Positions 186 through 62,538 of a stretch of DNA of 64,000 nt are shown in pieces. The notes beneath the pieces were generated by a model. That model had not been told where the DNA came from. It saw only the letters and a list, made by a program, of their open reading frames with translations, and made no database searches. The translations under genes were made by a program, and so were the position numbers. The stretch covers positions 1 to 64,000 of the forward strand of contig NIVC01002487.1 in NCBI GenBank assembly GCA_002269645.1, written 5' to 3'. The stretch comes from Macrostomum lignano. Its lineage: Eukaryota. Each line of letters opens with the position of its first letter. Positions within the stretch are counted from its first letter, which is position 1.

Positions 186-3100
186 GTCTGGTCTGCCCTC
201 GGCCCAATGCAACGCAGTCTACAGCCACCTGGCCGGTCACCTGGGCCTGGCCACAAAGGTTAGCCTGCGCCGTAAAATATTAAAAACTGCGCGAGAATCG
301 CAGCGAGTCCCAGTTGCAAGTGCTGCTAACCCGACTGCGCGAATTAGTGCAATCGGCTATGCCTGAACAGCTGGCCAGGCACGCTAAGGAGACTCGGCTC
401 TACAGGGAGCGAATAGACGCTTGGCGACAGCAGAACGACGCGGCCGCGGCTGCCGCGACGGCTGAGGGCAGGCCGCCGCCTTCGCCGTCGGTTGCCGGCA
501 AGCCGCCGGGCCCGCAACCGCGTCGAAACTTCGTCTGGTGCCAGAAGTCCACGGAGCTGTTGAACCGGGCGGCCAGGATTAAACTGGAAGCTTTGGCCAG
601 CCAGCGGATCAAAGAGAGCGAGCGGGAGGATGCGATTAAAGAGTTTGCTGAGAAGCAATTGGTGCCGCTGTGGCCAGCTGATTGGATGAGCTGCATGTGA
701 GTTTTGTTTTGCTTGGAGAACGTTGTGTAAGCAGCTTTTGGGATTTTGGGATCTCGACTTTAGAGCTTTTTGGAATTAGAATTTGGGGATTTTGGGATCT
801 TGAATTTTAGGTATTTCGGGATCTCACTTTAGGAATTTTTGGATGCCGAATTCAGGGATTTTGGGATCTCGATTTCAGGGATTTTGGGATCTCGATTTCA
901 GAGATTTTTGGATCCCAAATTTAGGAATTTTGGGATTTCGAGTTCAAGCTTGAGGACTTTATGATTTAGGATCCTTAAGGACTTTAGGATCTCAATTTTA
1001 GGGATTTCGTGATCTAGAATTTCAGGGATTTCGGGATCTCAAATTTCAGGGATTTCGGGATCTCCACCTAAGGCATTTTGGAATCTCGACTTCAGTAATT
1101 TTTTATCCCGAATTTAGAGATTTGGGATCTCGACTTAAATAATTTTTTATCGCGAATTTAGGGATTTTGGGATCTCGACTTTAGGGATTTTTTATCCCGA
1201 ATTTAGGGATTTTCGTATCTCGATTTAAGAGATTTTTCGATCCTGAGTTCAGGGATTTTGGGATCTCGATTTCAGGGATTTTGAAATCTCGATTTCAGGG
1301 ATTTCGGGATCTCGAAATTCTAGGGACTAGGATCTCTACCTAAGGCATTTTGGGATCTCGATTTTATGGATTCAGAGAATCATAGTTTTAGTCTATCCCA
1401 TAATCCTAATTTTAGCCGGAATTTTTATCGCAAATTTTAGGAAAGACAATTTAGAAATCTCTTTCAGAATGTAAGCTTTATCAAGCTTTGCTATGGAGTT
1501 GATCATACTGACTGGCTGCTTGTTTACAGGAAGTTGATGAGCATAATCAGGCCGATGCTGAAATCCAAGCCAAGCCAAGCCAAGCGCGAGCAGTCTCAGC
1601 AGCAGCGACAGCAGCAGCAGCAGCAGGCCTCTGCTACCGGTGCCTGCAAGGCCGAGCCAAGAGACAAGTCCAACTTCAAGTGAGAGTAGCGGCCGCTAAA
1701 GTTGTATTTTTCCTGTTTAGTTAGCAGGAGGTGCTAGAAGATTTTCTGTATTCAGCCAGCGACTGCAATTTATAGCTGATTGTTAAATCCTGTTTGTATA
1801 CACATGTACTTTGTTTTAATTCCTAACATTTTCTCCTAACAGAGCAGAGCACAAGATTGAGACAAGATGCCAACAAAAACTAACGTACTAATAGCAGTAC
1901 TGTTTCCGCATAAAATATTTGAAGTTTTAGTTCAGATTTTTATAGTAACACAACTATGCTAATGTTAATACATGGGCTTTACAGCTCTCAGCAACAGTCG
2001 CAGCATCTGCTGCCCGTCTCCAAACTTCAACAACGGCTGCAACAAGACAAGCCTCAGCAAGCACTGCAGCACCAAGTCACCACGCAGCAACCAACACCAC
2101 AGGTCGCAAGGCCTCGGGAACCGACACCACCACAAGTCTCAAGTCTTCAACAACCAACACCCCACAAGTCTCAAGTCTTCAGCAACCAACACCACCACAA
2201 ATCTCAAGGCCTCAGCAACCGACACCACCACAAATCTCAAGGCCTCAGCAACCGACACCATCACAGGTCTCAAGGCCTCAGCAACCGACGCCATCACAGG
2301 TCTCAAGACCTCAGCAACCGACACCATCACAGGTCTCAAGACCTCAGCAACCGACACCACCACAGGTCTCAAGGTCTCAGCAACCGATACTATCACAGGT
2401 CTCAAGGCTCAGCAACCAACACATCACAGGTCTCAAGGCCTCAGCAACCAACACCATCACAGGTCTCAAGGCCTCAGCAACCAACACCATCACAGGTTTC
2501 AAGATCGCAGCAACCGACACCATCACAGGTCTCAAGGCCTCAGCAACCGACACCATCACAGGTCTCAAGGCCTCAGCAACCGACACCATCACAGGTCTCA
2601 AGGCCTCAGCAACCGACACCATCACAGGTTTCAAGATCGCAGCAACCGACACCATCACAGGTCTCAAGACCTCAGCAACCTCAGCAACCGACACCGCCAC
2701 GGGTCTCAAGTCTTCAACAACCAGCATCACCACAGGTCTCAAGGCCTCAGCAACCGGCACCACCACAGGTCTCAAGGCCTGAGCAACCGCCGTCCAAACG
2801 TGTTTATGATCCTGTGCATTCGCCATCTCAAGAAATCTTCAAGTCTCAACAAATTCCACAGCGGCTCAGTAATGCATATCAGCCAATGCAGCAAGTCGCT
2901 AACCTTCAGCCATCAGCACCGCTAAGTTTCCCATCTCAACTGCAGACAACGCAGATGCATAAGCCTTCAAATCAATTGGCTCAGACATCGAAATCGCAGC
3001 AACAATCCAAGGCTAACTTAGCTAAGCAACAGTCGCAACAGTCGCTGTTTGATGCCTTTAAGTCAGTGCAGCAAGCTTCAAGTATCTATCAAAGTACGCA

Positions 3101-3595
3101 ACAGTCGCAGCAGAAGCAACAGAAACAAGATTTATCGTCATTTTCCACTCTTAATCAGTCTCAGCAAAAGCAGCAGCAGCAGACTCTGAGCCACTCGATT
3201 ACTCAGCAGCACCAACAGCAAAAGCTGCAGCCATTAATTCCTTCGCCGCCTCCAATGCCTCAGCAACAAGCTATGCCTCAACGGCAGCGTCAACAAAGGT
3301 TAGAGAAGCAGACACAGCCGACAGTGCCAAGCAGTAGTAGCAGTCTGGATGTTCACTTGTCACCATCGGCTGCATTGGCCGCAGCTGCAGCCGCAGCAGC
3401 TTGGCCTCATCAGCAAAATCAGCAACAGCATTCAGTATACTCTACTGGTGCTGTTAGCTCTGCATCTGCGCCTTTAGCTGCCTATAGCAATAGTCAAATC
3501 AATCTCAATCAGGTACAGCTGCATCAGCAACAGCAGCATCATCTTTTACTTCAGCGTCAGCAACAGCAAATTATGGCCGCTCAACAACAACAACA

Positions 3596-3630
<35 letters not shown>

Positions 3631-3755
3631 AACAACAACAGCAACAACAACAACAGCAGCAGCAGCAGGGTCGCTCGCTTCCACAGTTCAGCCATAGTTT
3701 TGGTCAGTTTGCCAGTAATTGGCCGTCGTTTGGGCAGCCGCCATATTATCAATGA
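186..3755 (+). CDS. UBN1: Ubinuclein/yemanuclein (HIRA complex subunit), 3' exons, 5'-partial
   Basis: Exon 186-696 encodes VYSHLAGHL...LRELVQSAMPEQ...PRRNFVW...IKLE...VPLWPADWM, matching the ubinuclein middle domain as recalled (VYAYLASFL...AIGRAMPEQ...PRKKFQW...KPLWPKGWM). Exons 1530-1679 and 1985-3755 join in phase through GT-AG sites and give a Q/P/S-rich tail ending at TGA 3753-3755. There is a frame discontinuity at about 259-313. UBN1 versus UBN2 cannot be distinguished. Confidence 0.8.
735..1370. repeat. Degenerate ~23-bp intronic tandem repeat (TTTTGGGATCTCGATTTCAGGGA)
   Basis: Recurring GGGATTTTGGGATCTCGA motif throughout the ubinuclein intron. Confidence 0.8.
2085..2790 (+). repeat. 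Coding 33-bp minisatellite (PQQPTPSQVSR units) in the last ubinuclein exon
   Basis: Unit CCTCAGCAACCGACACCATCACAGGTCTCAAGG, about 20 copies, inside the open frame 1956-3755. Confidence 0.85.
3582..3668 (+). repeat. CAA/CAG polyglutamine tract (29 Q)
   Basis: Mixed CAA/CAG run near the C-terminus of the ORF. Confidence 0.9.
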
Positions 3756-16000: not shown

Positions 16001-19000
16001 TTCGAATTGTGGATGCATAGTTAAGAGGCTCGTTCGGAGGCTTTATAACGACTAAAGTGTGAACTACGAGCTAAAAATAGATTAATTGCTCTCCTGACTC
16101 GGAACGACTTAGACAGGAAATTTCTAAGGACATTTCTTTAACTCTGCGTTGCGACTGAAGCGACTTCATCTTCCCTTATGAGATGTCAGAAAATCGTATG
16201 AGTTCTTAGTGAGTCGTCCGAGTTGGTTGCACGACAGGTTCAATCGGGTTCAATGACTTTCTAGCGACGCTTTTCATAACAATGTTTCTTTATCCTCATC
16301 CTACACTGCTCCGACTTTGTCAAGCTGCGATTCCTTTAGTCCTCCGGGCCTTACCGCTGCCCCGTCTTTTAGCTGCTTCATCCAACCCGTTTGGAACTTC
16401 GCCTCGGAATCGCTCAGCCTCGTAGTTGCCATTGTACAACTTCTCCAAGTCAATCTCGCGCCGGAGCAGATCCTTGACCAGAATGGTAAACGCGCTGCCC
16501 CAAATACCTGCGCAAGATAAATTATGTGGCGTTGCGATTACGAATATTAACAAAATGTAAACAGACGATTTCAAACATTAAGCTCTTTTACCCATCAAGA
16601 AGTGTAGCGGTGGCTCTTCATATTCGCGGCAAAGCCGCCCGATGAAGAATTTGCAACCGAAATGGCAGGTTCGTTGGAAGCAGCCGTACTTGGGCAAGCC
16701 GATTTCGAACGGCGTGAACTCGAGCCACTCTTGAAATATTCTCGCCGATACGTCTTTCTTAACGTTTAGACAGCAATAGAGAGGCAAAGGAAGGTTGGCG
16801 TACTTCACTTTTTGACATTGATCGCTCAGTTTGCAGGACATGCGCTGAAATTAATATGAGCGTATGATACAAGTAATTTTCCGATAAAATGATAGCCAGA
16901 GTGACTAGTATTGCAGCACAATGAAGCTCATTCTCAGTTAATGTATATTCATTTTGTCATACAACGCACAGCTTGAAATATTTTGTTTGTGACTTTAAAT
17001 TCGATAGGTTTATACGAGGAATGTTCAATAAACTGAACAGTCGGAGTGGGGCAACTGCTTTTCTATGTGGTTTGAGAGAATGAGGAAGTGCACTGATGCA
17101 GACGGAGAGTACTTCAGAAAGGGCTAAAAGTTTGTTTTTTATTTAACACTGTTGCTTTTCTATGGATCGGGAAATATATCGAACACCCCTCGTATTTACT
17201 GCAAATATGTTAAAGTAATTACCATAGGGACCCTTTTTCCATGCAGTTTCATGCACTTAACGGTGCCCATACGCGTCAATAGCTAAATTAGTGTGTTCCG
17301 CTTTAACAAGCCAAGTCCCTTGAATTGCAAATGCTGCTTTCTTCCGCTGTTCGCGAATATTTAAGACGCATAAATTAGGTCGTAAAGGTTTTAACATTAA
17401 ATCACTAAATCTAACCAGGTGCGTCGCCATAGATTTTATTCGTGGGGGGACATGTTCATGTATACATGACTAAATTCCTACATTAACATTATTTTAAGAA
17501 TCGTGTTGTCAGAACTCATTTTGGCGCCGCAGGCACTCATTTTGGTACCGCATGCACTCATTTTGACGCCGCAGGCACTCATTTTGGCGCCGCAGATACT
17601 CATTTTGACGCCGCAGGCACTCATTTTGGCGCCGTAGGCACTCATTTTAGCACCGCAGGCACTCATTTTGGCGCCGTAGGCGCTCATTTTGGCACCGCAG
17701 GCACTCATTTTGGTGCCTTGAAGAAAAATTATTGATTACATTATTGATTATTGGTCACAAGGTGGAGTGGGGGAACAAAGCATTGGCATGTCCCCCCCCA
17801 TAGCCTTTACTGGGGGTGGGGGGCATGTCTCCCCTGTCCCCCCGGTGGCGACGCGCCTGAATCCAACTGCTTACATCGGGTATCAACGTCTGGCCAATCA
17901 TCAACCCGAAGAAGTCGGTGAATGACAACGGTATGCCATGTCGCTTTTTCTCGGCCAGGAGGCACACATAGTTGTACAGGTAGCTGGGTGACACTAGTCG
18001 CAGCATTGATTGTTGAACCCGAGAGCGGATTTCTTGTTGCACTATGCGGCAAGACTTCCTGGGATACTCCGGGTGGGAATACAGGGTGGCCAGATACCAG
18101 GCTGAGCCTGCGGGTGTCAGTTAATGGCATGTAAATCGATTTCATAGTAAACGAGTGTACTTCCTTCAGCCATTTTAGCACTGAACATGCTCACTGTGAG
18201 CATCGATTTTGGCCTACAGCTTAATGCATGTGACTGTTAAAATGATTGCAGTTTCGCTTCACTTGAAGCATGAAGTCGCTTTTCTATATAGTAGTCTACC
18301 CTAAACATGAATTTAAGCTGTTTCCACCAACTTAAATATTTACCTTGATTAACCATAACTCAGTGGTCTCAGAATTCCTAAGAAATCGAATTCCTAAAAG
18401 TCGCAATAGCTTACCTAAATTTGTGTTAAATCAAGAAGGGTAAAAACGATTCTTCAATTTTTTATAGAAATTGGAGCATCCAAAGAAAACGGCTAGATCT
18501 AGAATGTTCATATTTTATTCTTCATTTCACATTAAACGCATGTTTTTGAGCGTTTTCCGTGACACCAAATTGTCTAGCACTTAATTCTGCATAGACATTC
18601 AAACAAAAACTCGTTCATTGCTACCTACAAAACAAGGATTTACTTTTATAACTGTCTTTGCTAAAAAAATTGGCAAATAGGACGCTAGCTAATTAGCACT
18701 GTCATTCAACGATATGCGCTATCATTTAATGCATCTCTCCGCTTGTAAGAATCAAGATCGTTGTGATTTGTGAAACCCCTATTGGAAGTTGTATTGTTAA
18801 GTTTGGCAATTACGGATCTAATCATTAAAAATAACTTACATACGGTACAACAAGTTGATATATGATATAATCTGAGCTAGCTCTGTAGCTCTCTAGCAAC
18901 CTACCTGACAGAGCGGCAGTGTAGGTTGTGCAGTCCAACACTCCGCTAGACTCCAATGCGTTGAACACTCCGCTAAAAGCGGCCATCGCTCGGAAGCCGC

Positions 19001-20710
19001 CACCGGAGCCCATCACGGCGATGACGGGCACCTCGTCGAGGCTTTCGGGAGCGGCTTCTCGGGGCAGCAGTCCGTGCAGCGCTTCGAACACGACTTTGCG
19101 CCGACGCTCGCGGAACATTTTCTCTTCGTTGCATAGGCACAGGCTGAACCGGAGGTCAGGCTTGCAGCTGTTCTCGGTTGGGTTGGGTGGTTACGGTAAA
19201 TTGTTAAGATGTTTAAGCGCTTACGTTTAGAAGTGGCTTATTCTCGTAGATGATTTGACAGTAATCGTATAATCCAACGAGCTATGTGTTAGTTGAAGTA
19301 AAATGATTAGCTTTGTGGTTACTTGAGTATACTGAATGTAAACTTGCTCAGCTATTGAGAACTATATTTAATAAATCATAGGTGTCTTACAAATTTTGAC
19401 TGTCAGAAACACCGCGGTTGTGAAAGTGTTCTCAGTATATGATAAGTGGAAGTGCAAGCCTTTTGACGATGGCGGTAATTTCGGGATAAAATTTAATGGT
19501 CTATAGATACTGGTCTAATAAACTTACTCGTTGCTCAAGTAAAATTCAATGTCAACTTGTCCTTTCTGAAAAAAAATGTTCGGGTAGGTTAAAATTTATC
19601 GAGTTACATGAAACTTTCAAGTGTACTAGTTTATCCTTCAGTTTACAACACACACTAACCTTGTCAAAATGGAATGTTTTTGCAATCATTCGATCCATTT
19701 TAAGATCTCCTAGTGGATAATAAACTTCGCCATATTGGCTATCCAAGCCCAAATGGTTCGCTTCCTTTAAAGAGATTACTGAAACGAAGTTGAGAGAAAA
19801 TATAGTTGATGCAGTAATATCAGTACCGGTTGTATAGTAGTCCCGGTTCTTTGGCACAAATATTATCATAACAGTTTTTTTCGAATTGGTCGAATATTCG
19901 AATTAGTGCATTACATGTAGTTCGCCTAGTGGTTAGAGCGTCAGACTCACGACTGAAATTTCAGGGGGTTCGATTCCCGATTCCACTGGAACAATTTGTG
20001 TCCTTGAGCAAGACACTCAACTCTACATTGCGTCAGTTCACCCAGCTGTAAAATGGGTGCCAGCATTAGCTGGGGTAATTGAGTGTGTGTGGCGGCCCCC
20101 CCCCCCCCCCTAGTCCTTGGACTGAACAGCCGTACGCAGCCTTCAGATAGGCCGCGCGATAACTGCGGCTGAGCTGTCGGTTGCACATCTGCACATCTGA
20201 AGGTGCAATTAAAAATGTAATTCGATCACTTACTTAGCACGTTCTCCTTCGCTCCATCGAGCAGAAAGGTGAAAGACTCGTTCCACATGGGGTCAGAGTT
20301 GTTCTCTATGCAGCTGGTTCGCTTCACTCCAGTTGGACTGCTGGGAATCTTCAGCTGCACGTAGGGATCCGGCTTGTCAACTGCGGAGGCAGAGTTCACT
20401 TTTGGTTTTACAATCAGATGAGGTAGTACAGATTCTGTCAAGTTTTGGTCACGCGCAACTCACTGAAATCCCACAGTCGACCTTTGGTGATCTTCCGACC
20501 TTTTATAACGGTTACCTGCAACACCTGGCACGGCTGCTGCTCAACCTTAAACACCTGGTAGGGATCGAATCTGCGGGGAAAAGCTTTGTGCACTATTGAC
20601 CTGGCCCGGAACTCTCGGCTAAACTTTTGACGCGACTGATCGTCAAAAATGTGGACACTTGGCTTTGGTTTTGACTTGAAATGCTTTTTCTGATTTTCCT
20701 GCTTATGCAT
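13035..20710 (-). CDS. PLA2G4A: Cytosolic phospholipase A2 (group IV; C2 domain plus lysophospholipase catalytic domain)
   Basis: In-phase exons: (20710)/20570-20464, 20380-20234, 19778-19660, 19351-19323, 19167-18905, 18107-17875, 16844-16592, 16507-16355, 15819-15541, 15443-15299, 15209-15058, 14794-14601, 14344-14158, 14062-13035. Motifs: FDPYQ, DKPDPYV, PDLRFS, GSGGGFRAM, ALSG/SAWY (catalytic Ser), EWLEFTPFEIG, PLHFLMG/IWGSAF, VVDAGLAFNSPYPL (catalytic Asp). The start codon is uncertain. Confidence 0.93.
17416..17859. mobile_element. hAT-type MITE with an internal 21-bp tandem repeat, in a cPLA2 intron
   Basis: TIRs CAGGTGCGTCGCCA...TGGCGACGCGCCTG, an 8-bp TSD AATCTAAC/AATCCAAC (7/8 match), and about 9 internal copies of GGCACTCATTTTGGCGCCGCA. 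Confidence 0.82.
19917..20220 (+). mobile_element. tRNA-derived SINE with a CORE-like central domain
   Basis: A box (CCTAGTGGTTAGAGCG), B box (GGTTCGATTCC), then GTGTCCTTGAGCAAGACACTCAACTC...CAGCTGTAAAATGGG, which resembles the CORE-SINE consensus as recalled. Confidence 0.72.
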
Positions 20711-21562
20711 TGTTTTTTATAACTGCGCTTAATTGCTTATAATTTGGAAGCTGGTTTAAATAGGCAGTTTCTTTAAGTCTGTTCGCTTTTTCTTGTACGC
20801 TTTTGAGGAACTGCGGTTCAGTAAACTTCCTGCTAGGTAGAAAATTGTATCTCTTTTCAGGGTTTTTCTGGGTACGATCGTTTCAAAAATTTTATTTTAG
20901 GTGCAGATGCAAAGCAAGATCCCCTAATGTGCATGTTAAGTTCAATAAATCGACGGCTATACTTACTCTTTTGTGAATTCCATCTATCAATCCTTGTAGT
21001 TTACTTCGAACGCAAACTGTTTCTTCAATCCATAATACTAGACTGTTCTAACAGGCGTTAATTGAAAACAACACAGAACTAAAATCTATGTTAACACATT
21101 TGCTTAAGCACACGAAGCAGTTAAGAGATAAGCATGAGAGCTAGGGCAATTTTGTAAGAGAATCTATTAACAGATTCGGCAGACAGCTCAGCAACAATAC
21201 ACGCCCACTCAGGCACGCGTTAGGCGCATCGCTCAAGTGTATAGTGTACACACAGACTATTTTACCCCCAGTTACTTCGAGACTGTGCTCATGAGTGTAC
21301 TCGCCAAAAATTAAAAGAAAAACTGAGAAGTTGGGGTTTGAAAAATGAAATTAGCGCACAAGATGTAGTACGCGTTTTGTAGTGAAGGTCAAACTGTACA
21401 GTGTTCTGCTAAATTTGGACAGCTTCAAGAAGGAAAAGAAGAGAAGAGAGTGGGGTGGCTGCCTGTGTCACACCACCCGATGTTTTGCGCATTAGTACGA
21501 AGGTATAATACACTGGAGCAGTCCGAAAGCTTGCATGCATATGTATATAATACACATGTAGT

Positions 21563-22191
21563 GGGGTCGCCATCATAAGCTCGAAAAATCACAAGCTCGA
21601 AAAATCATATCGTCGAAAACTGATTTAGCAGCCACCATCACAAGCTCGAAAAGTCATAAGCTCGAAAAATCATAACGTCGAGAAGTTTAGCAACCACCAT
21701 CACAAGCTCGAAAAGTCATAAGCTCGAAAAATCACATCGTCGAAAACTGATTTAGCAGCCACCATCACAAGCTCGAAAAGTCATAAGCTCGAAAAATCAC
21801 ATCGTCGAAAAGTTTAGCAAACACCATCACAAGCTCGAAAAGGCACAAGCTCTAACCCTAAACCCAAGGCACTAACCCTAACCCTAAGGCACCAGTACCC
21901 TAGCCTAACCCTGAACCATAACCCTAACCTAACCCTAAACCCCAACTTAAAGGCACTAGTTCTAACCCCGACCCTAACCCTAAGCCCTAACCCTAAGGCA
22001 CAAGCTCTAACCCTAACCCTATTCAAGCTTGTGATGGTGGTTGCTAACCTTTTCGACGATATGATTTTTCGAGCTTATGACTTTTCGAGCTTGTGATGGT
22101 GGTTGCTAAACTTTTCGACGATGTGATTTTTCGAGCTTGTGATGGTGGATGCTTTTCGACGATGTGATTTTTCGAGCTTGTGATGGGCCCC
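21563..22191. mobile_element. Foldback-type element with modular inverted arms and a telomere-like (CCCTAA)n core
   Basis: The left arm of CCACCATCACAAGCTCGAAAA...CGTCGAAAA modules (21563-21850) is mirrored at 22022-22191. The core 21852-22021 is rich in TAACCC. The flanks carry a direct repeat ATGTAGT (7 bp; 8 bp if CATGTAGT). Confidence 0.82.
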
Positions 22192-22973
22192 ATGTAGTGT
22201 ATCCTGTTGTTCTTGCGGTCACCGTATCCAGATCCAGATCTTCTGTGCTATGATCTCTGTTTGATGTAGGAATTTGTTGATAAACGTATTAGATGTAAAA
22301 TGCTTCTGAAAATATGAAGTTTCCTTGCTTGATAATATCTTCCATAGGTTGCGAGATCTTCCCTGCTAAATATAAGAGATTTTTCGGCTAGATGTGATAA
22401 AATATCATAAAAAAGTGAATCATCTCTTATACTATCTTTTCGAAATAGCTTAGTCTTAACTATACACAAATCTGCATTAAAAAGTACAAGCCAAAAGTTG
22501 AACAGTAGAATCAGTTCTTATAATATGAGCTTTATTTACGTCAAAAATCATTGCAAATTTCATCCCACTAAGCCAGTTATTTTATGGTGGATCAATCAAT
22601 CGATAATAACTCTGCTACCCTGCACTGCAGAATCCGTCTTTCTTACCGAAAAACGTAATAAGAAACAGAAAGCAGAGTGAAAATCAAAGGATTGCAAGGC
22701 TTGGCCTATCGGCTTTAATAAATATTTTATTATATATATCAGAGACAGCCGTAGGGGATCTCGCGAGCTCATTAGTTATTCCTCTGATCAGATTAAAATT
22801 ATAAATTCAGAGCAAATAGTGGCTGCATATTGTGTAATTTTAGATCGAAAAATACAAGAACTGTTTCTTGATAAATCTTAGTTTATATCGTATAGGTTTC
22901 ATCAAATTTATTGATACCGCCAATATTGGTATCAAGCCAAAGCCAAGCCAAACTTATTGAACTTTGGCCAGAT

Positions 22974-23369
22974 TTAGATTTCTCTCATTGCTTTATGCAG
23001 GTATTCGTAGCCTCGCTTGCTCAGCATGGCGTCCCTCAGGTAGTTGTAACCTCGCTTGCTCAGCATGGCGTCCCTCAGGTAGTTATAGCCTCGCTTGCTC
23101 AGCATGGCGTCCCTCAGGTAGTTGTAGCCTCGCTTGCTCAGCATGGCGTCCCTCAGGTAGTTGTAGCCTCGCTTGCTCAGCATGGCGTCCCTCAGGTAGT
23201 TATAGCCTCGCTTGCTCAGCATGGCGTCCCTCAGGTAGTTGTAGCCTCGCTTGCTCAGCATGGCGTCCCTCGGGTAGTTATAGCGTCGCTTGCTTTCGTG
23301 AGCCTCGACCGTCAAGAAGCAGACAACGGCAATGACTGCCATAGCAAAAGCCGTTCCATAACGCACCAT
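22974..23369 (-). CDS. Neuropeptide prohormone: signal peptide plus 8 KR-flanked peptides (RYNYPRDAMLS, 6x GYNYLRDAMLS, GYEYLHKAMREI)
   Basis: 131-aa ORF with a hydrophobic N-terminus (AFAMAVIAVVCFLTVEA) and a KR after every 11-mer. Differences among the six identical units are synonymous only (GGT/GGC, TAC/TAT). An AG lies just upstream of the ATG and a CAG|GTGAGT donor at 23893 suggests a 5'UTR exon. Confidence 0.88.
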   Translation of the reverse strand: MVRYGTAFAMAVIAVVCFLTVEAHESKRRYNYPRDAMLSKRGYNYLRDAMLSKRGYNYLRDAMLSKRGYNYLRDAMLSKRGYNYLRDAMLSKRGYNYLRDAMLSKRGYNYLRDAMLSKRGYEYLHKAMREI

Positions 23370-24246
23370 GCTTGAATTAGCGTCAACGATATCTCAAGGT
23401 GCACGCGGTAGTTAATCCTTCGTGTGGATGTTGCTGTCGTTAAGAAGGAAATGGTGGCTAGATTTACTTACTCGCGGCTTATATTTTACAACTTAATCCT
23501 GTGGGGTGCATATTTAATGAGAGAGTCGGTAAAATATGCCAATGTGCCATATGCCATATGGCTCGCGGTGCGTCACCGATTGATAGGAAAAATCATTTTT
23601 TATGCTTGCTCTTATTTTTCTAATCTATCGAATTTGAGACCGCGTCACTACGACCAGTTCGATCTAGCAAGCACTAAACTGAATCCATTATGCTAATCCA
23701 TGCCTCCATCCAAGCCTCAAGGGAACTCAAGCTGCTGGCTTGGATAATATCAAATAATTTGATTTATTTGCCGCCTAAAGCGCGAATTTTTTGCAGCTAT
23801 GAAAAACTGAGCGAATTTCATGATGCAGCCTGTCTGAGAGCATGTATTAATATCTTTCTATAACATTCAATATATATATCAGCAAAACTCACCTGTTAGT
23901 ACGTTGAGACAAGCTCCAGTTCAAGAGAAGTTCTGGACTAAAAACCCGCTCGTGCCGCTGGAGGACCTGCGTCTCGAGCTGTTATAAGCTTTCAATAACA
24001 AAATTCGAGAGAATGAAACGACTGAACTGGATTTGATGCCAACCAATCGTGATTGGTTCTGGAGTTAATGAAAGCTTTAAACACGGGATGAGAGTGCAGG
24101 GCTGTGAGGGGATTTTTCTGTCCTCAGGTAGTAGGGAATTTTCCTTCTCTAAAAATCCAAAGCCTGATGCTTCTAATCCATCTCAGACTGTAGGGAATTT
24201 AAAAACCACCGCTTTTCAAAGATAGCAAATTCTTTCTTAATAAGTC

Positions 24247-24288
24247 TTCTGTCTCTATCTGTCTGCCCGTCTGTCTGTCTGTCTGCCC

Positions 24289-24330
<42 letters not shown>

Positions 24331-24340
24331 CTCTCTGTCC

Positions 24341-24398
<58 letters not shown>

Positions 24399-24408
24399 CT
24401 CTCTGTCC

Positions 24409-24474
<66 letters not shown>

Positions 24475-24517
24475 GTGTCGTGTCTGTGTGTCTGTCTGTC
24501 TGTCTGTCTGTCTGTAG

Positions 24518-24615
<98 letters not shown>

Positions 24616-24654
24616 GTGTCGTTTCTGTGTGTCTGTCTGTCTGTCTGTCTGTAG

Positions 24655-24709
<55 letters not shown>

Positions 24710-24740
24710 AGAGTGTCTGTCTGTCTATCTGTCTGTCTGT
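24247..24740. repeat. (TCTG)n microsatellite
   Basis: Long interrupted TCTG run. Confidence 0.95.
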
Positions 24741-25082
24741 GTAACTAGCTGGCTGCTATTAGGAACGGCTAGTTTGATTGTGCGTCTCAAAATTGCTCAT
24801 AGAGTTCCACTCGAGATGGCCTCAGGCATGCTCAATTTTCTTCACTTGGGAGTTCGCAGGTGCTCAAGAAATGTTTCATTAACTCAAGCCTTCAAAAGGC
24901 TCGAACTAGTTTGCTTACAAGCGTACTTACAACGTACTTCCCTTACTTTCTCTGATCCGTTAAAATCGACTCATCTTCTCCGAGGTCTAATTAACCTGCC
25001 TTGATTCATTCTATAAGACTCTGTCGAATCTTTTTTCACAAATTTTCAGATTTTTTTGATTAGACCAACATGTCCTAATGGT

Positions 25083-25410
25083 TCTATCTGCATCTATCTA
25101 CATGGTGTCACTGTCGATTGTGTCTGATCTACACGGTGTCACTGTCGATTGTGTCTGATCTACACGGTGTCACTGTCGATTGTGTCTGATCTACACGGTG
25201 TGTCTGATCTACAAGGTGTCACTGTCGATTGTGTCTGATCTACACGGTGTGTCTGATCTACAAGGTGTCACTGTCGATTGTGTCTGATCTACACAGTGTC
25301 ACTGTCGATTGTGCCTGATCTACACGGTGTCACTGTCAATTGTCTCTGATCTACACAGTGTCACTGTCGATTGTGTCTGATCTACACGGTGTCACTGTCG
25401 ATTGCGTCTG
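25083..25410. repeat. 31-bp tandem repeat (TCTACACGGTGTCACTGTCGATTGTGTCTGA)
   Basis: About 10 copies, some internally deleted. Confidence 0.9.
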
Positions 25411-25641
25411 GTACTATTGTCGACAGTTTAGTATTTGAGACTTTTTGATGCCATCTTTTTGAGTAGCTGGATCTGGTCTCTGTCTAAGTTTCGTGCGATA
25501 CTGTTTTGTTTAAACTTCTGAAAGAATTTCTGATTTTTATTATCCAGGAGTATTATAGTCTATGGTAAGTCGGTTTTTGTTCTTATAAAGCATTTTTTCC
25601 GCGAGCAAACACTGAGAATTCTAGTATTAGAATAATTTTAG

Positions 25642-28746
<3,105 letters not shown>

Positions 28747-28859: not shown

Positions 28860-29865
28860 TTTGTGTCCCTGTCTGTCCCTGTCTGTCCCTGTCTGTCTGT
28901 CCCTGTCTGCCTTTGTCTGTCCCTGCCTGTCCCTGCCTGTCTTTGTCTGTCCCTGTCTGTCTTTGTCTGTCCCTGCCTGTCTTTGTCTTTGTCTGTCCCT
29001 GCCTGTCCCTGCCTGTCTTTGTCTGTCCCTGTCTGTCTTTGTCTGTCCCTGTCTGTCTTTGTCTGTCCCTGCCTGTCTTTGTCTGTCCCTGTCTGCCTTT
29101 GTCTGTCCCTGCCTGTCCCTGCCTGTCTTTGTCTGTCCCTGTCTGTCTTTGTCTGTCCCTGCCTGTCTTTGTCTGTCCCTGTCTGCCTTTGTCTGTCCCT
29201 GCCTGTCCCTGCCTGTCTTTGTCTGTCCCTGCCTGTCTTTGTCTGTCCCTGCCTGTCTTTATCTGTCCCTGCCTGTCTTTGTCTGTCCCTGTCTTTGTCT
29301 GTCCCTGTCTGTCTTTGTATGTCCCTGTCTGCCTTTGTCTGTCCCTGCCTGTCCCTGCCTGTCTGTCTGTCCCTGCCTGTCTTTGTCTGTCCCTGTCTGT
29401 CTTTGTCTGTCCCTGTCTGTCTTTGTATGTCCCTGTCTGCCTTTGTCTGTCCCTGCCTGTCCCTGCCTGTCTTTGTCTGTCCCTGCCTGTCTTTGTCTGT
29501 CCCTGTCTGTCTTTGTATGTCCCTGCCTGTCTTTGTCTGTCCATGTCTGTCTTTGTATGTCCCTGTCTGCCTTTGTCTGTCCCTGCCTGTCTTTATCTGT
29601 CCCTGCCTGTCTTTGTCTGTCCCTGTCTTTGTCTGTCCCTGTCTTTGTCTGTCCCTGTCTGCCTTTGTATGTCCCTGTCTGCCTTTGTCTGTCCCTGCCT
29701 GTCTTTATCTGTCCCTGCCTGTCTTTGTCTGTCCCTGTCTTTGTCTGTCCCTGCCTGTCTTTGTCTGTCCCTGCCTGTCTTTATCTGTCCCTGTCTGTCT
29801 TTTTCTGTCTCGTGTCTGTCTCTGTCTGTCCCTGTCTGTCTTTGCCTGTCCCTATCTGTCAGTGT
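28860..29865. repeat. Compound CTGT/CCCTGT/CTTTGT simple-sequence satellite
   Basis: Pyrimidine-rich low-complexity tract just after the stop of the two-TM gene. Confidence 0.93.
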
Positions 29866-45056: not shown

Positions 45057-48000
45057 ATGTTTGGCAGAGCTGCTGGCACCGAACGCGAGGCGGCCGCGGC
45101 AGACTGAGCCCGATAATAGGTATCGGCCATAGACAGTCTGGCCATCAGCTGTTCAAGCTGCTGCATAAGATCTCGCCTGGACTCCTGCAGACGGCCCATC
45201 CTGTCCTCAAGTTGATCTTTGCGCTGTCTGAGATGTCGCAACTCGCCAAGGAGGCTGTTCTGATTTATGATCAGCTGATCCTGGCTGTGACTCTGCTGTT
45301 CCCGCAGCTGAGCCGACTGCAATTTTAACTGTTCAATCTCTGCAAGCATGCGTTCGTTTTGACGTTCCAAGTCGCGAATTTTGCGCTCCTGAGCTCGCGC
45401 CTGCGCCAGATCGGCAGCCGAAGCGGCTAAAGCGGCCGCGCCGCCATCGCCGCCAATGGCGCCGACTGGAAAAGCGCCGGAATTGGCGCCGGCTGCGCCA
45501 TTTAATTGTAGAGCGGCCGCGTACCTTGAGGGTTGGCGCCGAGGGATGCTTCATCAGAAAAGGACGTCTGTTTTCTAAGAATGGCGTCTATTTCTAAGAA
45601 TGGCGTCTATTTCTAAGAATGGCGTCTGTTTCTAAGAATCACGTCTGTTTCTAAGAATCACGTCTGCTTCTAAGAATCACGTCTGTTTATAAGAATTACG
45701 TATGTTTCTAAGAATGACGTCTGTTTCTATGAGTGACGTCTTTTTTCTAAGAATCATGTCTGTTTCTAAGAGTGACGTCGGTTTTCTAAGAATGACGCCT
45801 GTTTCTAAGAATGACGCCTGTTTCTAAGAATAACGCCTGTTTCTAAGAATAACGCCTGTTTCTAAGAATCACCTGTTTCTTAGAATCACGTCTGCTTCTA
45901 AGAATGATGTCTATTTTCTAAGAATTACGTCTGTTTTTAGAAACGACGTCTATTTCTAGGAATGACACCTGTTTTCTAAGAATAAAGCTTAGTTCTTAAA
46001 ATTAACTCCAGTTTTAAGAACATTTTTAGTACAAAACTTTCTAATAATATTGTAGCTGTTTTTAAAACAACGAATTTTTTTAAAAAAAGAAACGACTTGC
46101 TCTACTTAAAAAAGCTTTAATTTTTGTTGATATTAAACCTTCAAAAAGAGACTCAGGTTGGTCTTCAAGAAACACGGTCAAGAAGAGAGTAATTTTTGAC
46201 TCCCTACCTGGCAATTAACCGATGTTCGTCATCCAATCGCTGTTGCTGCTGTTGCTGTTGCTGCTGCCCAGACACAAAGGCATTCGTAGTCACAGTCAGT
46301 GCGCCAGTAGCGAGACTTGCTGGAGCCCACGCGTTAATCCCTGGCTGCTGCTGGTGCTGCTGATGCTGCACTGCTTGCAAAGCGAGCCCATCCGACATCA
46401 TTGGCTGAGCTATTGAAGCCGCAGAAAAAGGCGCAATACTAACAGAAGCAGCTGTAGCAGCAATTGATGGCATTGCTGAAGTCCCACCGTCAACATGCTG
46501 CAGACTGTGCGACAGCTGGGTGAGCTTGCCGGGTCTGCCCAGGCTGCCTCCTGCGGGTGGTTGTGGGGGGGGGGAGGCCCCGGGTTCGATTCCTCGTTAA
46601 TTTCGAAGGACCCGGGCTCGATACCAGATATGGCGTAAGAGGACCCAGGTTTGATTCCGGGTAGGGTGTCAGAGGGCCCGGGTTTGATTCCAGGTAGGGT
46701 GTCAGAGGGCCCGGGTTTGATTCCAGGTAGGGTGTCAGAGGGCCCGGGTTCGATTCCAGGTATGGTGTCAGAGGACCCGGGTTCGATTCCAGGTAGGGTG
46801 TCAGAGGGCCCGGGTTTGATTCCAGGTATGGTGTCAGAGGGCCCGGGTTCGATTCCAGGTATGGTGTCAGAGGACCCGGGTTCGATTCCAGGTAGGGTGT
46901 CAGAGGGCCCGGGTTCGATTCCAGGTATAGTGTCAGAGGACCCGGGTTTGATTCCAGGTAGGGTGTCAGAGGACCCGGGTTTGATTCCAGGTAGGGTGTC
47001 AGAGGGCCCGGGTTCGATTCCAGGTAGGGTGTCAGAGGACCCGGGTTCGATTCCAGGTATGGTGTCAGAGGACCCGGGTTTGATTCCGGGTAGGGTGTCA
47101 GAGGGCCCGGGTTTGATTCCGGGTATAGTGTCAGAGGACCCGGGTTCGATTCCAGGTAGGGTGTCAGAGGACCCGGGTTTGATTCCAGGTAGGGTGTCAG
47201 AGGGCCCGGGTTCGATTCCAGGTAGGGTGTCAGAGGACCCGGGTTCGATTCCAGGTATGGTGTCGGAGGACTCGGGTTCGATTCCAGGTAGGGTGTCAGA
47301 GGGCCCGGGTTCGATTCCAGGTATGGTGTCAGAGGACCCGGGTTCGATTCCAGGTATGGTGTCAGAGGACCCGGGTTCGATTCCAGGTAGGGTGTCAGAG
47401 GACCCGGGTTCGATTCCAGGTATGGTGTCAGAGGACCCGGGTTTGATTCCGGGTAGGGTGTCAGAGGGCCCGGGTTTGATTCCAGGTATAGTGTCAGAGG
47501 ACCCGGGTTCGATTCCAGGTATGGTGTCAGAGGACCCGGGTTTGATTCCAGGTAGGGTGTCAGAGGGCCCGGGTTCGATTCCAGGTAGGGTGTCAGAGGG
47601 CCCGGGTTCGATTCCAGGTAGGGTGTCAGAGGACCCGGGTTTGATTCCGGGTAGGGTGTCAGAGGACCCGGGTTTGATTCCGGGTATGGTGTCAGAGGGT
47701 CCGGGTTTGATTCCAGGTATGGTGTCAGAGGACCCGGGTTCGATTCCAGGTATGGTGTCAGAGGACCCGGGTTTGATTCCGGGTATGGTGTCAGAGGACC
47801 CGGGTTTGATTCCAGGTAGGGTGTCGGAGGGCCCGGGTTCGATTCCAGGTAGGGTGTCAGAGGACCCGGGTTCGATTCCAGGTAGGGTGTCAGAGGGCCC
47901 GGGTTCGATTCCAGGTAGGGTGTCAGAGGGCCCGGGTTCGATTCCAGGTAGGGTGTCAGAGGACCCGGGTTCGATTCCAGGTATGGTGTCAGAGGACCCG

Positions 48001-49514
48001 GGTTCGATTCCAGGTAGGGTGTCAGAGGGCCCGGGTTCGATTCCAGGTAGGGTGTCAGAGGACCCGGGTTCGATTCCAGGTAGGGTGTCAGAGGGCCCGG
48101 GTTCGATTCCAGGTAGGGTGTCAGAGGACCCGGGTTCGATTCCAGGTAGGGTGTCAGAGGGCCCGGGTTCGATTCCAGGTAGGGTGTCAGAGGGCCCGGG
48201 TTCGATTCCAGGTAGGGTATCAGAGGACTAGTTTTAAACTTAGAAAATCTGATGTAACTAAGGAAAATAGGAGAGGGTGCATCAGTCTATATCTGCACTT
48301 TATTATTGACAGTACTTGGATTGCATTAGAGCACAGTCTTAGACTATGCATACATACATATAATGCATATGCATGGTTCTCAATTTTCACCCAAAACTAT
48401 AAAAGCAAACGCCCAGCAAAGTCAAGCATTCGTAATGAAATCAAGGAGAGACAGGGGGTGAGAGAGGAATTCGGAGAAATTCAATTTACTGCAACTCTGA
48501 GCGACACTGCCACAACCGCAGCCATGGGGCTAACAAATCACTTTTTTTAGAGACTGTGCACCGCTTCATTAGCCCTTTGGGACAGGGCGATTGACAGTAA
48601 ATAGTGCATTTTAGCTGCGGGATGGATAGAGTACCTCATAACTCATAGTTATCCCGAATCTCCCAGATCCCCTCCTAGCCATCCAAATCTCCCAGATCCC
48701 TTCATAGTCATCCCAAATCTCCCAGATTCCCTTCTAGTCATCCCAAATCTCCCATATTCCCTTCTAGTCATCCCAAATCTCCCAGATTCCCTTCTAGTCA
48801 TCCCAAATCTCCCAGATCCCCTCCTAGCCATCCAAATCTCTCCCCTTCTAGTCATCCCAAATCTCCCAGATTCCCTTCTAGTCATCCCAAATCTCCCAGA
48901 TTCCCTTCTAGTCATCCCAAATCTCCCAGATTCCCTTCTAGTCATCCCAAATCTCCCAGATTCCCTTCTAGTCATCCTAAATCTCCCAGATCCCCTCCTA
49001 GCCATCCAAATCTCCCGAATCCCCTCCTAGTCATCCCGAATCTCCCGAATCCCCTCCTAGTCATCCCAAATCTCCCAGATCCCCTTATAGCCATCCGAAA
49101 TCTCCCAGATCCCCTCCTAGCCATCCCAAATCTCCCAGATCCCCTTCTAGTCATCCGAAATCTCCCGAATCCCCTTATAGTCATCCGAAATCTCCCGAAT
49201 CCCCTTATAGTCATCCCAAATCTCCCAGATCCCCTTATAGTCATCCCAAATCTCCCAGATCCCCTTATAGTCATCCCAAATCTCCCAGATCCCCTTATAG
49301 TCATCCGAAATCTCCCGAATCCCCTTATAGTCATCCGAAATCTCCCGAATCCCCTTATAGTCATCCCAAATCTCCCAGATCCCTCTCCATCAGCCTCACC
49401 AGTGGCAGTCAGACTCTGGTTCATTGACGCGGGCGGAGGCGGAGGCGGCACAATGTGAGTCAGGTCAAGCATCGGGCCGCTGTCCTGTGGATCCAACAGC
49501 GCCGCGGCCGTCGT

Positions 49515-61700: not shown

Positions 61701-62538
61701 CGGCAGCCTGGTTCAGATGGCGATGCAACGCTGGATGCGAGCCGACCTGCGGGCTGACAACATCACCGCTCTGGTGGTGATGCTGGACCCGCCGGGCAGG
61801 CCCATGTCGCAGCTGCGCAGCGAACAGCGCGACTTGACGCTAGCCAGGCTGGGACTGCAGCGAGAGTCGCCGACTGTAGTTGAAGGCGGCTTCTCAGACG
61901 ATGCCGAACGACAGCAGAGTCAGCAGCAGCAGCCGCTTCGCCTGCACGATCTGTTGGTCCAGTGCGACAAATGGCAGAACGCCAACAGGCCCGGCGCCAA
62001 TGCTCACGGCCACGCCAGGCACGCGCCGGCAGCCGCCGTCGAGCCGAGCGGCAAGCTGACTGGCCAGGCAATGGTGAAACGGCAGGCCGGCAGCGATCGG
62101 ACCCTGTTCTCGCCCGGCTTCAAACGTTCCCCGGCTCCGCCCCCGTTGTCGGGCTCGGCGACAGCGTCGGCTCCAGCATCGCAGGCTGCTGGCGTCAGCT
62201 TCTACCTGCCAACGACTCCAACAATTGATTCTACTTCTCCGTCGGCAAAGCGGCAGACTCGATCTACCGCGGCGTCTCCTGCTGCTGCTGCTGCCGCCGC
62301 CGCGCCGTCAAGTCCTGCTGGTAAAAAGCAGCAGAAACAGCAAAAGCAAAAGCAGCAACAATTGCAGCTGAAAAAGTCCGGCTCTGCCGCTGCTGCTGCT
62401 ACTGCTGCTGCTGCTTCCACTTCTGCAACACCGGTTGCTGCTAAACGCCGGCGCCTGTCAATGGGCTCCTCGGTGCCGGGAGCTTCGGCTGTTGAAAGCT
62501 GTTTAAAACGGCTTCGTAAGCGAAAGAGTGTGCGCTAA
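58749..62538 (+). CDS. PPM1D: Protein phosphatase 1D (Wip1, PP2C family)
   Basis: In-phase exons 58749-59082, 60310-60875 and 61654-62538. Motifs: NQGMRAYMED, FGVFDGHGG, TAGTTAS, GHVGDSAIVLG, HKPSNPKERERIERAGG, RVVWRRP, PFLAVARSLGDLWSY, LILGSDGLWN, RADNIT, followed by a disordered basic tail. Confidence 0.93.
59740..60130. repeat. Degenerate intronic repeat (AATCACTCTAATCCACC / AATCGCCCCTAATCTCC)
   Basis: Recurring motif in PPM1D intron 1. Confidence 0.7.
60920..61470. repeat. 42-bp intronic tandem repeat (GAAACTGGGTCTGTATTCTAAGAAACAGAGCTGCTATTCCAA)
   Basis: About 13 copies in PPM1D intron 2. Confidence 0.92.

What the first reader, a model, noticed from the sequence alone, without database searches (positions are those of the whole stretch)
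22974..23369. Multi-copy neuropeptide precursor (GYNYLRDAMLS x6) disguised as a 39-bp minisatellite
Seen: a signal-peptide-like N-terminus, then HES-KR, RYNYPRDAMLS, six GYNYLRDAMLS and a terminal GYEYLHKAMREI, each separated by KR. The six core units differ only at synonymous third positions, unlike the non-coding arrays nearby. Established: KR is the prohormone convertase site, and absence of a C-terminal Gly means the peptides are not amidated. Inference: this is a real secreted peptide family that I do not recognise, with a Y-x-Y-L core, and repeat masking would probably hide it from annotation.
Basis: partly seen in the sequence, partly recalled or inferred. Interest (0 to 1): 0.8.

Follow-up and report, generated by a model that had tools for sequence, protein, structure and literature searches.

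The report
Flatworm multi-copy secreted peptide precursor gene
A small single-exon gene of the flatworm Macrostomum lignano encodes a signal peptide followed by eight short peptides separated by Lys-Arg cleavage sites, which is the usual layout of a neuropeptide or peptide-hormone precursor; GenBank already lists the gene, but with six of the eight copies wrongly spliced out.

Summary
Window 22974-23369 (- strand) is a 131-aa ATG-to-stop ORF: a signal-peptide-like N-terminus, HES-KR, RYNYPRDAMLS, six GYNYLRDAMLS and GYEYLHKAMREI, with KR at every junction. It sits on a 39-bp array of 7.6 copies.

The window is Macrostomum lignano contig NIVC01002487.1. The locus is already annotated as hypothetical protein BOX15_Mlig028694g1 (PAA57452.1). 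That annotation is built only from stranded RNA-seq, so a minus-strand transcript model exists. Its product is only 53 aa, which is the ORF minus exactly 234 nt (six units). No placement of that gap has GT-AG ends, so it looks like a repeat-collapse artefact.

No homologue was found in 5.8 billion protein clusters, 1.84 billion representatives, metagenomes or the literature. The best reading is a lineage-restricted, KR-processed, non-amidated multi-copy secreted peptide precursor. "Neuropeptide" is plausible but untested, because no tissue or mass-spectrometry data were found. This is a new member of a known kind, of moderate interest.

The parts
22974..23369 (-). Complete single-exon CDS, 131 aa plus stop: the multi-copy peptide precursor. 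It occupies the same 396 bp as GenBank gene BOX15_Mlig028694g1.
23301..23369 (-). Predicted signal peptide MVRYGTAFAMAVIAVVCFLTVEA. It has an n-region with Arg3, a hydrophobic core of about 15 residues, and V-E-A at -3..-1. The ATG is in a strong context (A at -3, G at +4).
   Evidence: Assessed by heuristics only; SignalP was not available.
23286..23300 (-). Spacer HES followed by the first KR site.
23247..23285 (-). Diverged first unit RYNYPRDAMLS-KR, with 3 nt differences from the core unit.
23013..23246 (-). Six core units GYNYLRDAMLS-KR (6 x 39 nt). They differ at three unit positions, all synonymous.
22974..23012 (-). Diverged last unit GYEYLHKAMREI plus the TAA stop. It differs from the core at 18 of 39 nt but keeps G-Y-x-Y-L..A-M.
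22998..23294 (.). 39-bp tandem array as called by TRF: 7.6 copies, 95% matches, no indels.
23051..23284 (-). The 234 nt (exactly six units) missing from the annotated 53-aa product, in the only placement with GC..AG ends. The other 12 equivalent placements have no splice-like ends, and none is GT-AG. This is probably a repeat-collapse artefact.
23478..23483 (-). TATAAG, a candidate TATA box 109 nt upstream of the ATG.
   Evidence: Sequence match only.
22907..22912 (-). AATAAA, a candidate polyadenylation signal beginning 61 nt after the stop codon.
   Evidence: Sequence match only.

Best explanation
This is a real, transcribed, single-exon gene of Macrostomum lignano that encodes a small secreted precursor of the prohormone or proneuropeptide type.

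Proposed mechanism; the steps below are inferred from the sequence and from established secretory-pathway biochemistry.
1. The N-terminal 23 residues direct the protein into the ER and are removed after V-E-A.
2. In the secretory pathway a subtilisin/kexin-type convertase (PC2/PC1-3 or furin-like) cuts after each of the eight KR pairs.
3. A carboxypeptidase E-like enzyme trims off the Lys and Arg.
4. This releases one (R)YNYPRDAMLS, six identical GYNYLRDAMLS (monoisotopic mass 1301.607 Da, net charge about 0) and one GYEYLHKAMREI.
5. No peptide ends in Gly, so none is amidated.

The six identical copies amplify the peptide yield per transcript. The peptides most likely act as extracellular signals, as neuropeptides or peptide hormones.

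The GenBank model (53 aa, two peptides) is a truncated version. Six units were lost when a collapsed short-read transcript was aligned to the long-read genome.
For: **Shown by the sequence**
- A complete ORF with a hydrophobic N-terminus obeying the -3/-1 rule, and KR at all eight junctions, including the two diverged edge units.
- A strong start-codon context, TATAAG upstream and AATAAA downstream.
- A GC island of 58% against flanks of 31-40%.
- This is the only one of 136 ATG-ORFs in the window that has both a hydrophobic N-terminus and four or more KR.

**Shown by the database**
- The locus carries GenBank gene BOX15_Mlig028694g1 / PAA57452.1 on the same strand with the same start and stop.
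- That annotation derives only from stranded RNA-seq and a de novo transcriptome, with the weaker of two opposite-strand transcripts discarded (PMC5730564 section 31).

**Supporting the artefact reading of the 53-aa model**
- The gap is exactly 6 x 39 nt and lies in repeat register, with no GT-AG placement.

**Context**
- In planarians pc2 RNAi lowers a specific set of peptides, and dibasic convertase sites are used to predict prohormone processing (PMC2953531).
- The exhaustive HMMER search pulled out genuine KR-periodic multi-copy precursors (P0033, P0043, P0049, P0057) as architectural look-alikes.
- The peptide is neutral (pI 5.8), which fits a signalling peptide better than a cationic antimicrobial peptide.
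- AlphaFold2 gives no confident globular fold, only one short helix per unit broken at each KR-G.
Against: - There is no direct evidence of translation, secretion, cleavage, cell type or receptor.
- The signal peptide was judged by heuristics, not by SignalP.
- No orthologue was found anywhere, so there is no evolutionary test of constraint.
- Within-array variation is too small to show purifying selection.
- The units are 99% identical, so the array expanded or homogenised recently, and the gene could be young.
- The precursor has no acidic spacers, and the uncleaved proprotein is very basic (pI 10.2).
- No expression data for this gene were found in six papers' supplements; one of them holds no supplement text.
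- I could not see the transcript itself, only the gene model derived from it.
Confidence: 0.62

Rival explanations
1. The precursor chemistry is the same, but it is not neuronal. The peptides would be made by a gland (prostate or seminal fluid, epidermal, pharyngeal or adhesive) and act outside the animal or in the mating partner, as an allohormone, pheromone or defence peptide.
For: Nothing in the sequence says 'neuron'. M. lignano has many small, fast-evolving, lineage-restricted secreted prostate products (topic of PMC5977470). The absence of any orthologue suits rapidly evolving reproductive or ecological proteins.
Against: The gene is not in the held supplements of the seminal-fluid screen, although those use older transcript names, so this is weak. 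The peptide is neutral, unlike a typical antimicrobial peptide. Tight KR-only spacing of identical short peptides is most typical of neuroendocrine precursors (my own knowledge).
Confidence: 0.2
2. It is a transcribed minisatellite with a fortuitous or very young ORF. The transcript exists, but the protein is not made or has no function.
For: The window is saturated with minisatellites, and tandem and simple repeats make up 15% of this genome (PMC5730564). Three frames are open across the array. Units are 99% identical, no orthologue is known, and the synonymous-site argument is statistically weak.
Against: A unique, non-repeat 5' segment supplies the ATG in a strong context plus a textbook signal-peptide layout directly in frame with the array. 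The diverged edge units keep KR and the Y-x-Y..AM core. The stop, the AATAAA and the TATAAG are all well placed. No other ORF in the window combines these features.
Confidence: 0.1
3. It is an unprocessed, basic, Tyr-rich secreted structural repeat protein, such as an eggshell or adhesive component cross-linked through tyrosine. The KR pairs would be charged or cross-linking residues rather than cleavage sites.
For: After the signal peptide the protein is 15% Tyr, 16% Arg and 8% Lys, with pI 10.2. Flatworm eggshell precursors are Tyr/Lys-rich repeat proteins (my own knowledge, not tested here).
Against: It is small (13 kDa), has only 6.5% Gly, and has a strict KR at every unit boundary. It shows no sequence similarity to any eggshell, vitelline or adhesive protein in 1.84 billion representatives, and no confident repeat fold.
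Confidence: 0.05
4. The annotated 53-aa product is correct. Either a real 234-nt GC-AG intron is spliced out, or the expressed allele or paralogue has only two units. The gene would then yield just two peptides.
For: GenBank model PAA57452.1. One placement of the gap has GC..AG ends. M. lignano carries duplicated genome blocks, 180 Mb at 95% identity or more (PMC5730564), and minisatellite copy number is often polymorphic.
Against: The gap equals exactly six repeat units and can be slid to 13 equivalent positions. The GC donor context GAC|GCTATA is far from the AG|GCAAGT typical of GC-AG introns (my own knowledge). Short-read de novo assembly followed by BLAT or STAR mapping is expected to collapse 99%-identical 39-nt units. 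The genome was assembled from long reads.
Confidence: 0.1

Closest known systems
Invertebrate multi-copy proneuropeptides and prohormones, such as FMRFamide-type, Wamide/MIP-type (P0049 and P0057), planarian NPP/SPP prohormones (PMC2953531) and nematode NLP precursors
   Same: A signal peptide followed by tandem copies of a short peptide, each bounded by a dibasic KR site. The copies are near-identical and the edge copies diverged. The protein is small.
   Different: No sequence similarity to any of them. There is no C-terminal Gly, so no amidation. There are no acidic spacers. The motif G-Y-x-Y-L-R-D-A-M-L-S was not found in any paper searched. Expression and processing are untested.
GenBank PAA57452.1 / UniProt A0A267E9S5, hypothetical protein BOX15_Mlig028694g1 of Macrostomum lignano
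   Same: The same locus, strand, start codon and stop codon. All 53 residues occur in the genomic ORF.
   Different: It lacks 78 residues (six units), carries no functional annotation, and its multi-copy nature is invisible.
Fungal Kex2-processed repeat proteins and pheromone or RiPP precursors (yeast alpha-factor, UstA-type repeats), cited from my own knowledge
   Same: It works the same way: a signal peptide plus many copies of a short, often Tyr-containing, core peptide released at KR by a kexin-family protease.
   Different: The kingdom is different: the window carries a dystrobrevin-like gene and belongs to a flatworm. There is no sequence similarity, and no evidence of cyclisation or modification enzymes nearby.

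Membership tests
Multi-copy secreted peptide precursor (prohormone/proneuropeptide class) | N-terminal cleavable signal peptide | tested here: met
   It has Arg3, a hydrophobic core of about 15 residues (mean Kyte-Doolittle 3.17, fourth highest of 136 ORFs) and V-E-A at -3..-1. This is a heuristic judgement; SignalP was not available.
Multi-copy secreted peptide precursor (prohormone/proneuropeptide class) | Repeated short peptides each flanked by dibasic convertase sites | tested here: met
   Eight KR sites at a 13-residue period bound eight peptides of 11-12 aa.
Multi-copy secreted peptide precursor (prohormone/proneuropeptide class) | The gene is transcribed on the coding strand | tested here: met
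   An RNA-seq-only GenBank gene model lies on the same strand with the same start and stop (method in PMC5730564). This is indirect: the reads themselves were not seen.
Multi-copy secreted peptide precursor (prohormone/proneuropeptide class) | Mature peptides are actually produced by convertase and carboxypeptidase processing | not testable with these tools
   This needs LC-MS/MS peptidomics, ideally with pc2 RNAi.
Neuropeptide (in the strict sense) | Expression in neurons or neurosecretory cells, with action through a receptor | not testable with these tools
   No expression data for Mlig028694 in the text or supplements searched.
Known flatworm neuropeptide families (FLP, NPF/NPY, NPP and SPP families) | Sequence similarity of the precursor or peptide to a described family member | tested here: not met
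   The only true hit in 5.8 billion clusters and 1.84 billion representatives is the gene's own truncated model. No literature string match. The Koziol 2016 and McVeigh 2009 catalogues could not be read directly.
Known flatworm neuropeptide families (FLP, NPF/NPY, NPP and SPP families) | C-terminal Gly amidation signal, which is typical although not universal | tested here: not met
   All units end ...MLS-KR and the last ends ...REI-stop. None has Gly before the basic pair.
Non-coding minisatellite | A tandem array with no features of a gene beyond an open frame | tested here: not met
   It is a 39-bp array, but it is joined in frame to a unique ATG and signal-peptide segment, ends in a stop with AATAAA, and carries a transcript-based gene model.
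Flatworm eggshell or adhesive Tyr-rich structural proteins | Sequence similarity or a Gly/Tyr-dominated low-complexity composition | tested here: not met
   No such hits. Composition is 15% Tyr but only 6.5% Gly, and the period is strict with KR at each boundary.

The most novel reading that the evidence does not exclude
GYNYLRDAMLS is the founding member of a Macrostomum-restricted, non-amidated signalling peptide family with no relatives in other animals. The gene arose recently, when a 39-bp minisatellite expanded in frame behind a signal-peptide-encoding segment. That would be a concrete case of a peptide-hormone gene being born or amplified through the minisatellite dynamics that pervade this genome.
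Probability: 0.25. Interest if true: 0.55.

Novelty: new member of a known kind. Interest (0 to 1): 0.35.

Why it matters
If the peptides are real, M. lignano gains a candidate signalling peptide with no known relatives. This flatworm is a transgenic model for regeneration, stem-cell and sexual-selection research, and the candidate can be tested directly by RNAi, in situ hybridisation and mass spectrometry.

There is also a practical lesson. Multi-copy peptide precursors with near-identical units are systematically damaged by short-read transcript assembly and by filters that discard transcripts overlapping repeats. Here the public protein record keeps only two of the eight peptides. Peptide-precursor catalogues built from such annotations will undercount copies or miss genes. 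The architecture itself is ordinary for invertebrate peptide precursors.

Tried and rejected
- **Word-indexed protein search.** The only hit was P0001 (E 3e-3), a Logan ORF with RGYNF repeats, no signal peptide and no KR. I rejected it as chance.
- **Exhaustive HMMER search.** It gave 64 hits, and I read 24 of them in full. Apart from P0027 they were unrelated proteins with roughly 13-residue repeats, or genuine KR-periodic neuropeptide precursors matching only through periodicity. A motif scan of all retrieved proteins found KR-x-Y-x-Y repeated only in P0027.
- **Pfam.** Four sub-threshold or zero-domain repeat-driven hits (YqbF, DUF559, zf-NOSIP, CW_7), which I treated as spurious.
- **Exact-sequence look-up of the 131-aa product.** Not on record.
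- **Metagenome scan.** Nothing confirmed.
- **Rfam on the whole window and tRNA scan.** Nothing.
- **Literature string searches.** Searches for the peptide and for the gene id found nothing relevant.
- **Supplement searches of six M. lignano papers.** No occurrence; one of the six holds no supplement text.
- **Six-frame motif search for a second copy in the window.** None.
- **Synonymous-site argument as proof of coding.** Rejected as underpowered and non-specific.
- **AlphaFold2 on the single sequence.** pLDDT was 61, too low to justify a fold search, so none was run.
- **Dystrobrevin exon search.** Best hits were only about 40% identical (fish, coral), which is not informative about the source. 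No M. lignano protein appeared in either run of this search tool. Negative results from it about M. lignano paralogues are therefore not informative.

Full report
**1. The observation**

The minus strand of window 22974-23369 is an uninterrupted ATG-to-TAA ORF of 131 codons. Its translation is:

MVRYGTAFAMAVIAVVCFLTVEA HES KR RYNYPRDAMLS KR (GYNYLRDAMLS KR)x6 GYEYLHKAMREI*

Tandem Repeats Finder calls a 39-bp array at 22998-23294 with 7.6 copies, 95% matches and no indels.

The six core units differ at three unit positions on two sites: TAC/TAT in two units and GGC/GGT in one. All three are third-codon and synonymous in this frame. The same changes alter amino acids in the two + strand frames that are also open across the array.

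**2. Is it more than chance?**

An open frame across the array carries no weight. A stop-free 39-bp unit is open for as long as it repeats, and three frames are open here.

The synonymous-only pattern is also weak.
- It rests on two sites.
- 22% of all single substitutions and 36% of transitions in the unit are synonymous, so p is roughly 0.05-0.13.
- Arrays elsewhere in the window that are presumably non-coding show equal or stronger codon-phase bias, because one variant unit gets copied. The 33-bp array at 46607-48228 has phase counts of 2/74/27, p = 1e-17.

What is unusual is the conjunction of other features.
- A unique, non-repeat 5' segment supplies an ATG in a strong context (A at -3, G at +4), with an in-frame stop nine codons upstream.
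- That segment has a textbook signal-peptide layout: Arg3, a hydrophobic core of about 15 residues, and V-E-A before the predicted cut.
- A KR pair sits at every one of the eight junctions, including the two diverged edge units.
- The stop lies in the last, degenerate unit, and an AATAAA begins 61 nt after it.
- A TATAAG lies 109 nt upstream of the ATG.
- The CDS is a GC island of 58%, against 31-40% on either side.
- Of 136 ATG-ORFs of at least 50 aa in this repeat-saturated window, this is the only one with both a strongly hydrophobic N-terminus and four or more KR.

**3. Where it comes from, and what is already on record**

An exhaustive HMMER search of 1.84 billion representative proteins returned one true relative, P0027. 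It is 53 aa long and 92% identical to residues 1-50:

MVRYGTAFAMAVIAVVCFLTVEAHESKRRYNYLRDAMLSKRGYEYLHKAMREI

P0027 is GenBank PAA57452.1 / UniProt A0A267E9S5, 'hypothetical protein BOX15_Mlig028694g1 [Macrostomum lignano]'. It is encoded on contig NIVC01002487.1 of assembly GCA_002269645.1, at record coordinates 22974-23369. The fetched locus is base-for-base identical to window 17974-28369.

According to its authors, the GenBank annotation of this assembly is made only from transcripts (PMC5730564 section 31):
- Stranded RNA-seq was assembled with StringTie and TACO and merged with a de novo transcriptome mapped by BLAT.
- Where transcripts came from both strands at the same coordinates, the lower-expressing one was discarded.
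- ORFs were called with TransDecoder.
- Transcripts overlapping repeat annotations were excluded.

A gene model with the same strand, start and stop is therefore indirect but real evidence of a minus-strand transcript. I could not see the reads themselves.

**4. The annotated product is truncated**

The 53-aa product equals the genomic ORF minus exactly 234 nt, which is six 39-nt units. The deletion can be placed at 13 equivalent positions. None has GT..AG ends. One (23284..23051) has GC..AG, in a poor donor context, GAC|GCTATA.

A gap that is an exact multiple of the repeat and lies in repeat register is what one expects when a short-read transcript assembly collapses 99%-identical units and is then aligned to a long-read genome. 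I therefore read the 'intron' as an artefact.

I cannot exclude a shorter allele or paralogue. The assembly contains 180 Mb of blocks duplicated at 95% identity or more. A genuine GC-AG intron is also possible but less likely.

In fact the gene is annotated, but six of its eight peptides are hidden. It may have survived the repeat-overlap filter only because the collapsed model skips most of the array; that is my inference.

**5. Relatives elsewhere**

None were found.
- The word-indexed search of 5.8 billion clusters gave only P0001. This is a Logan ORF with RGYNF repeats and no signal peptide or KR, at E 3e-3, and I dismissed it.
- The other 62 HMMER hits fall into two kinds. Some are long, unrelated proteins with repeats of roughly 13 residues. 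Others are genuine multi-copy neuropeptide precursors whose KR periodicity matches: P0033 ...YVVDPILGKR..., P0043 GLDHIGSSLLDKR, and P0049 and P0057 GWNxLxxxWGKR. The latter are architectural analogues, not homologues.
- A metagenome scan confirmed nothing.
- Pfam gave only sub-threshold, repeat-driven noise.
- Peptide strings and the gene id occur in no paper of the library, nor in the supplements of six M. lignano papers, one of which holds no supplement text.

One caveat applies. M. lignano's own RNA-seq, which should be in the Logan assemblies, produced no hit either. Repeat-broken short-read contigs are therefore probably blind to this gene, and its absence from other Macrostomum species is not established.

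**6. Mechanism**

Shown: the precursor architecture, and the existence of a transcript model.

Inferred from established secretory-pathway biochemistry:
1. The protein enters the ER co-translationally and the signal peptide is cut after Ala23.
2. A PC2/PC1-3 or furin-type convertase cleaves after each KR.
3. A carboxypeptidase E-type enzyme removes the basic residues.
4. The products are HES, one (R)YNYPRDAMLS, six GYNYLRDAMLS and one GYEYLHKAMREI.

No unit ends in Gly before the KR, so peptidylglycine alpha-amidating monooxygenase has no substrate and the peptides keep free C-termini. In planarians pc2 RNAi lowers a specific set of peptides, and dibasic convertase sites are used to predict prohormone processing (PMC2953531).

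The core peptide is neutral (pI 5.8; monoisotopic mass 1301.607 Da). This fits a signalling ligand better than a cationic membrane-active peptide.

A single-sequence AlphaFold2 model is of low confidence (pLDDT 61). It shows one short helix per unit, broken at each KR-G, and no globular or solenoid fold. That is compatible with a polyprotein of short peptides and gives no support to a folded structural repeat.

**7. Rivals**

- (a) Same chemistry but a gland product, such as a seminal-fluid allohormone, a pheromone or a defence peptide. The sequence cannot separate this from a neuropeptide.
- (b) A transcribed minisatellite with a fortuitous or very young ORF. The repeat-rich setting and the lack of orthologues favour it. 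The conjunction of start context, signal peptide, conserved KR, stop and poly(A) signal argues against it.
- (c) An unprocessed, basic, Tyr-rich structural protein. The composition is suggestive (15% Tyr, pI 10.2). Its small size, the strict KR period, the low Gly content and the lack of any similar protein argue against it.
- (d) The 53-aa model is the true product.

Probabilities are given in the Rival explanations section.

**8. Comparison, novelty and verdict**

It works like the multi-copy proneuropeptides and prohormones of invertebrates and, more remotely, like the Kex2-processed repeat precursors of fungi. It meets the structural criteria of the first class: a signal peptide, dibasic-flanked repeats and transcription. 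It fails the one criterion for membership of any named family, which is sequence similarity.

It is best described as a new, apparently lineage-restricted member of a known kind of gene. The database record exists but is truncated and uncharacterised. Calling it a 'neuropeptide' remains a hypothesis.

Interest is moderate. It is a testable candidate signalling peptide in a genetically tractable flatworm, and a clear example of how repeat collapse distorts peptide-precursor annotation. It is not a surprising architecture.

Noticed in passing
window 21570-22186: A degenerate telomere-like tract (CCCTAA/CTAACC)n lies at 21852-22021. It is flanked by arrays of a 62-65-bp unit in opposite orientation, with arms up to 93 nt that are 93-95% complementary. 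This is a palindromic structure about 700 bp downstream of the peptide gene's poly(A) signal. It could be an interstitial telomeric site, a head-to-head fusion remnant, or a transposon with repeat-bearing terminal inverted repeats.
   Followed up: partly
window 46607-48228: There are 49 copies of a 33-bp unit, AGGACCCGGGTTCGATTCCAGGTAGGGTGTCAG, which contains GGTTCGATTCC, the tRNA T-arm consensus. ARAGORN finds no intact tRNA in the window. This may be a tRNA- or SINE-derived satellite. Its variants are strongly phase-biased (2/74/27) although it is presumably non-coding.
   Followed up: partly
window 28447-28746 (+): A 99-aa ATG ORF has a signal-peptide-like N-terminus ([22 protein letters not shown]...). 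It lies just upstream of the long TGTCCCTGTC-type array at 28864-29860. It may be another small secreted-protein gene or it may be chance.
   Followed up: no
window about 17974-20983 (-), seen as L003 7387-10396: The next called gene on the same strand, downstream of the peptide gene, encodes a 1104-aa product with C2 and PLA2_B domains (cytosolic phospholipase A2-like).
   Followed up: no
window 55732-56643 (-), 60375-60908 (+) and 61672-62538 (+): A long dystrobrevin-like exon (EF-hand_2, EF-hand_3, ZZ) is only about 40% identical to fish and coral dystrobrevins. Nearby, 60375-60908 (+) matches the PP2C phosphatase family; the adjacent ORF at 61672-62538 (+) was not scanned and may belong to the same gene. 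No M. lignano protein appeared in either run of the word-indexed protein search tool.
   Followed up: partly
window 1956-3755 (+): A 599-aa Gln/Pro-rich ORF contains the 33-bp array at 2098-2789, which encodes PQQPTPSQVSR-type repeats and ends in a poly-Gln run. This may be a second case of a minisatellite lying inside coding sequence.
   Followed up: no
whole window: TRF reports 94 rows. Minisatellites with periods of 10-65 bp and arrays up to 1.7 kb occur every 1-2 kb, consistent with the published figure that tandem and simple repeats make up 15% of this genome.
   Followed up: no
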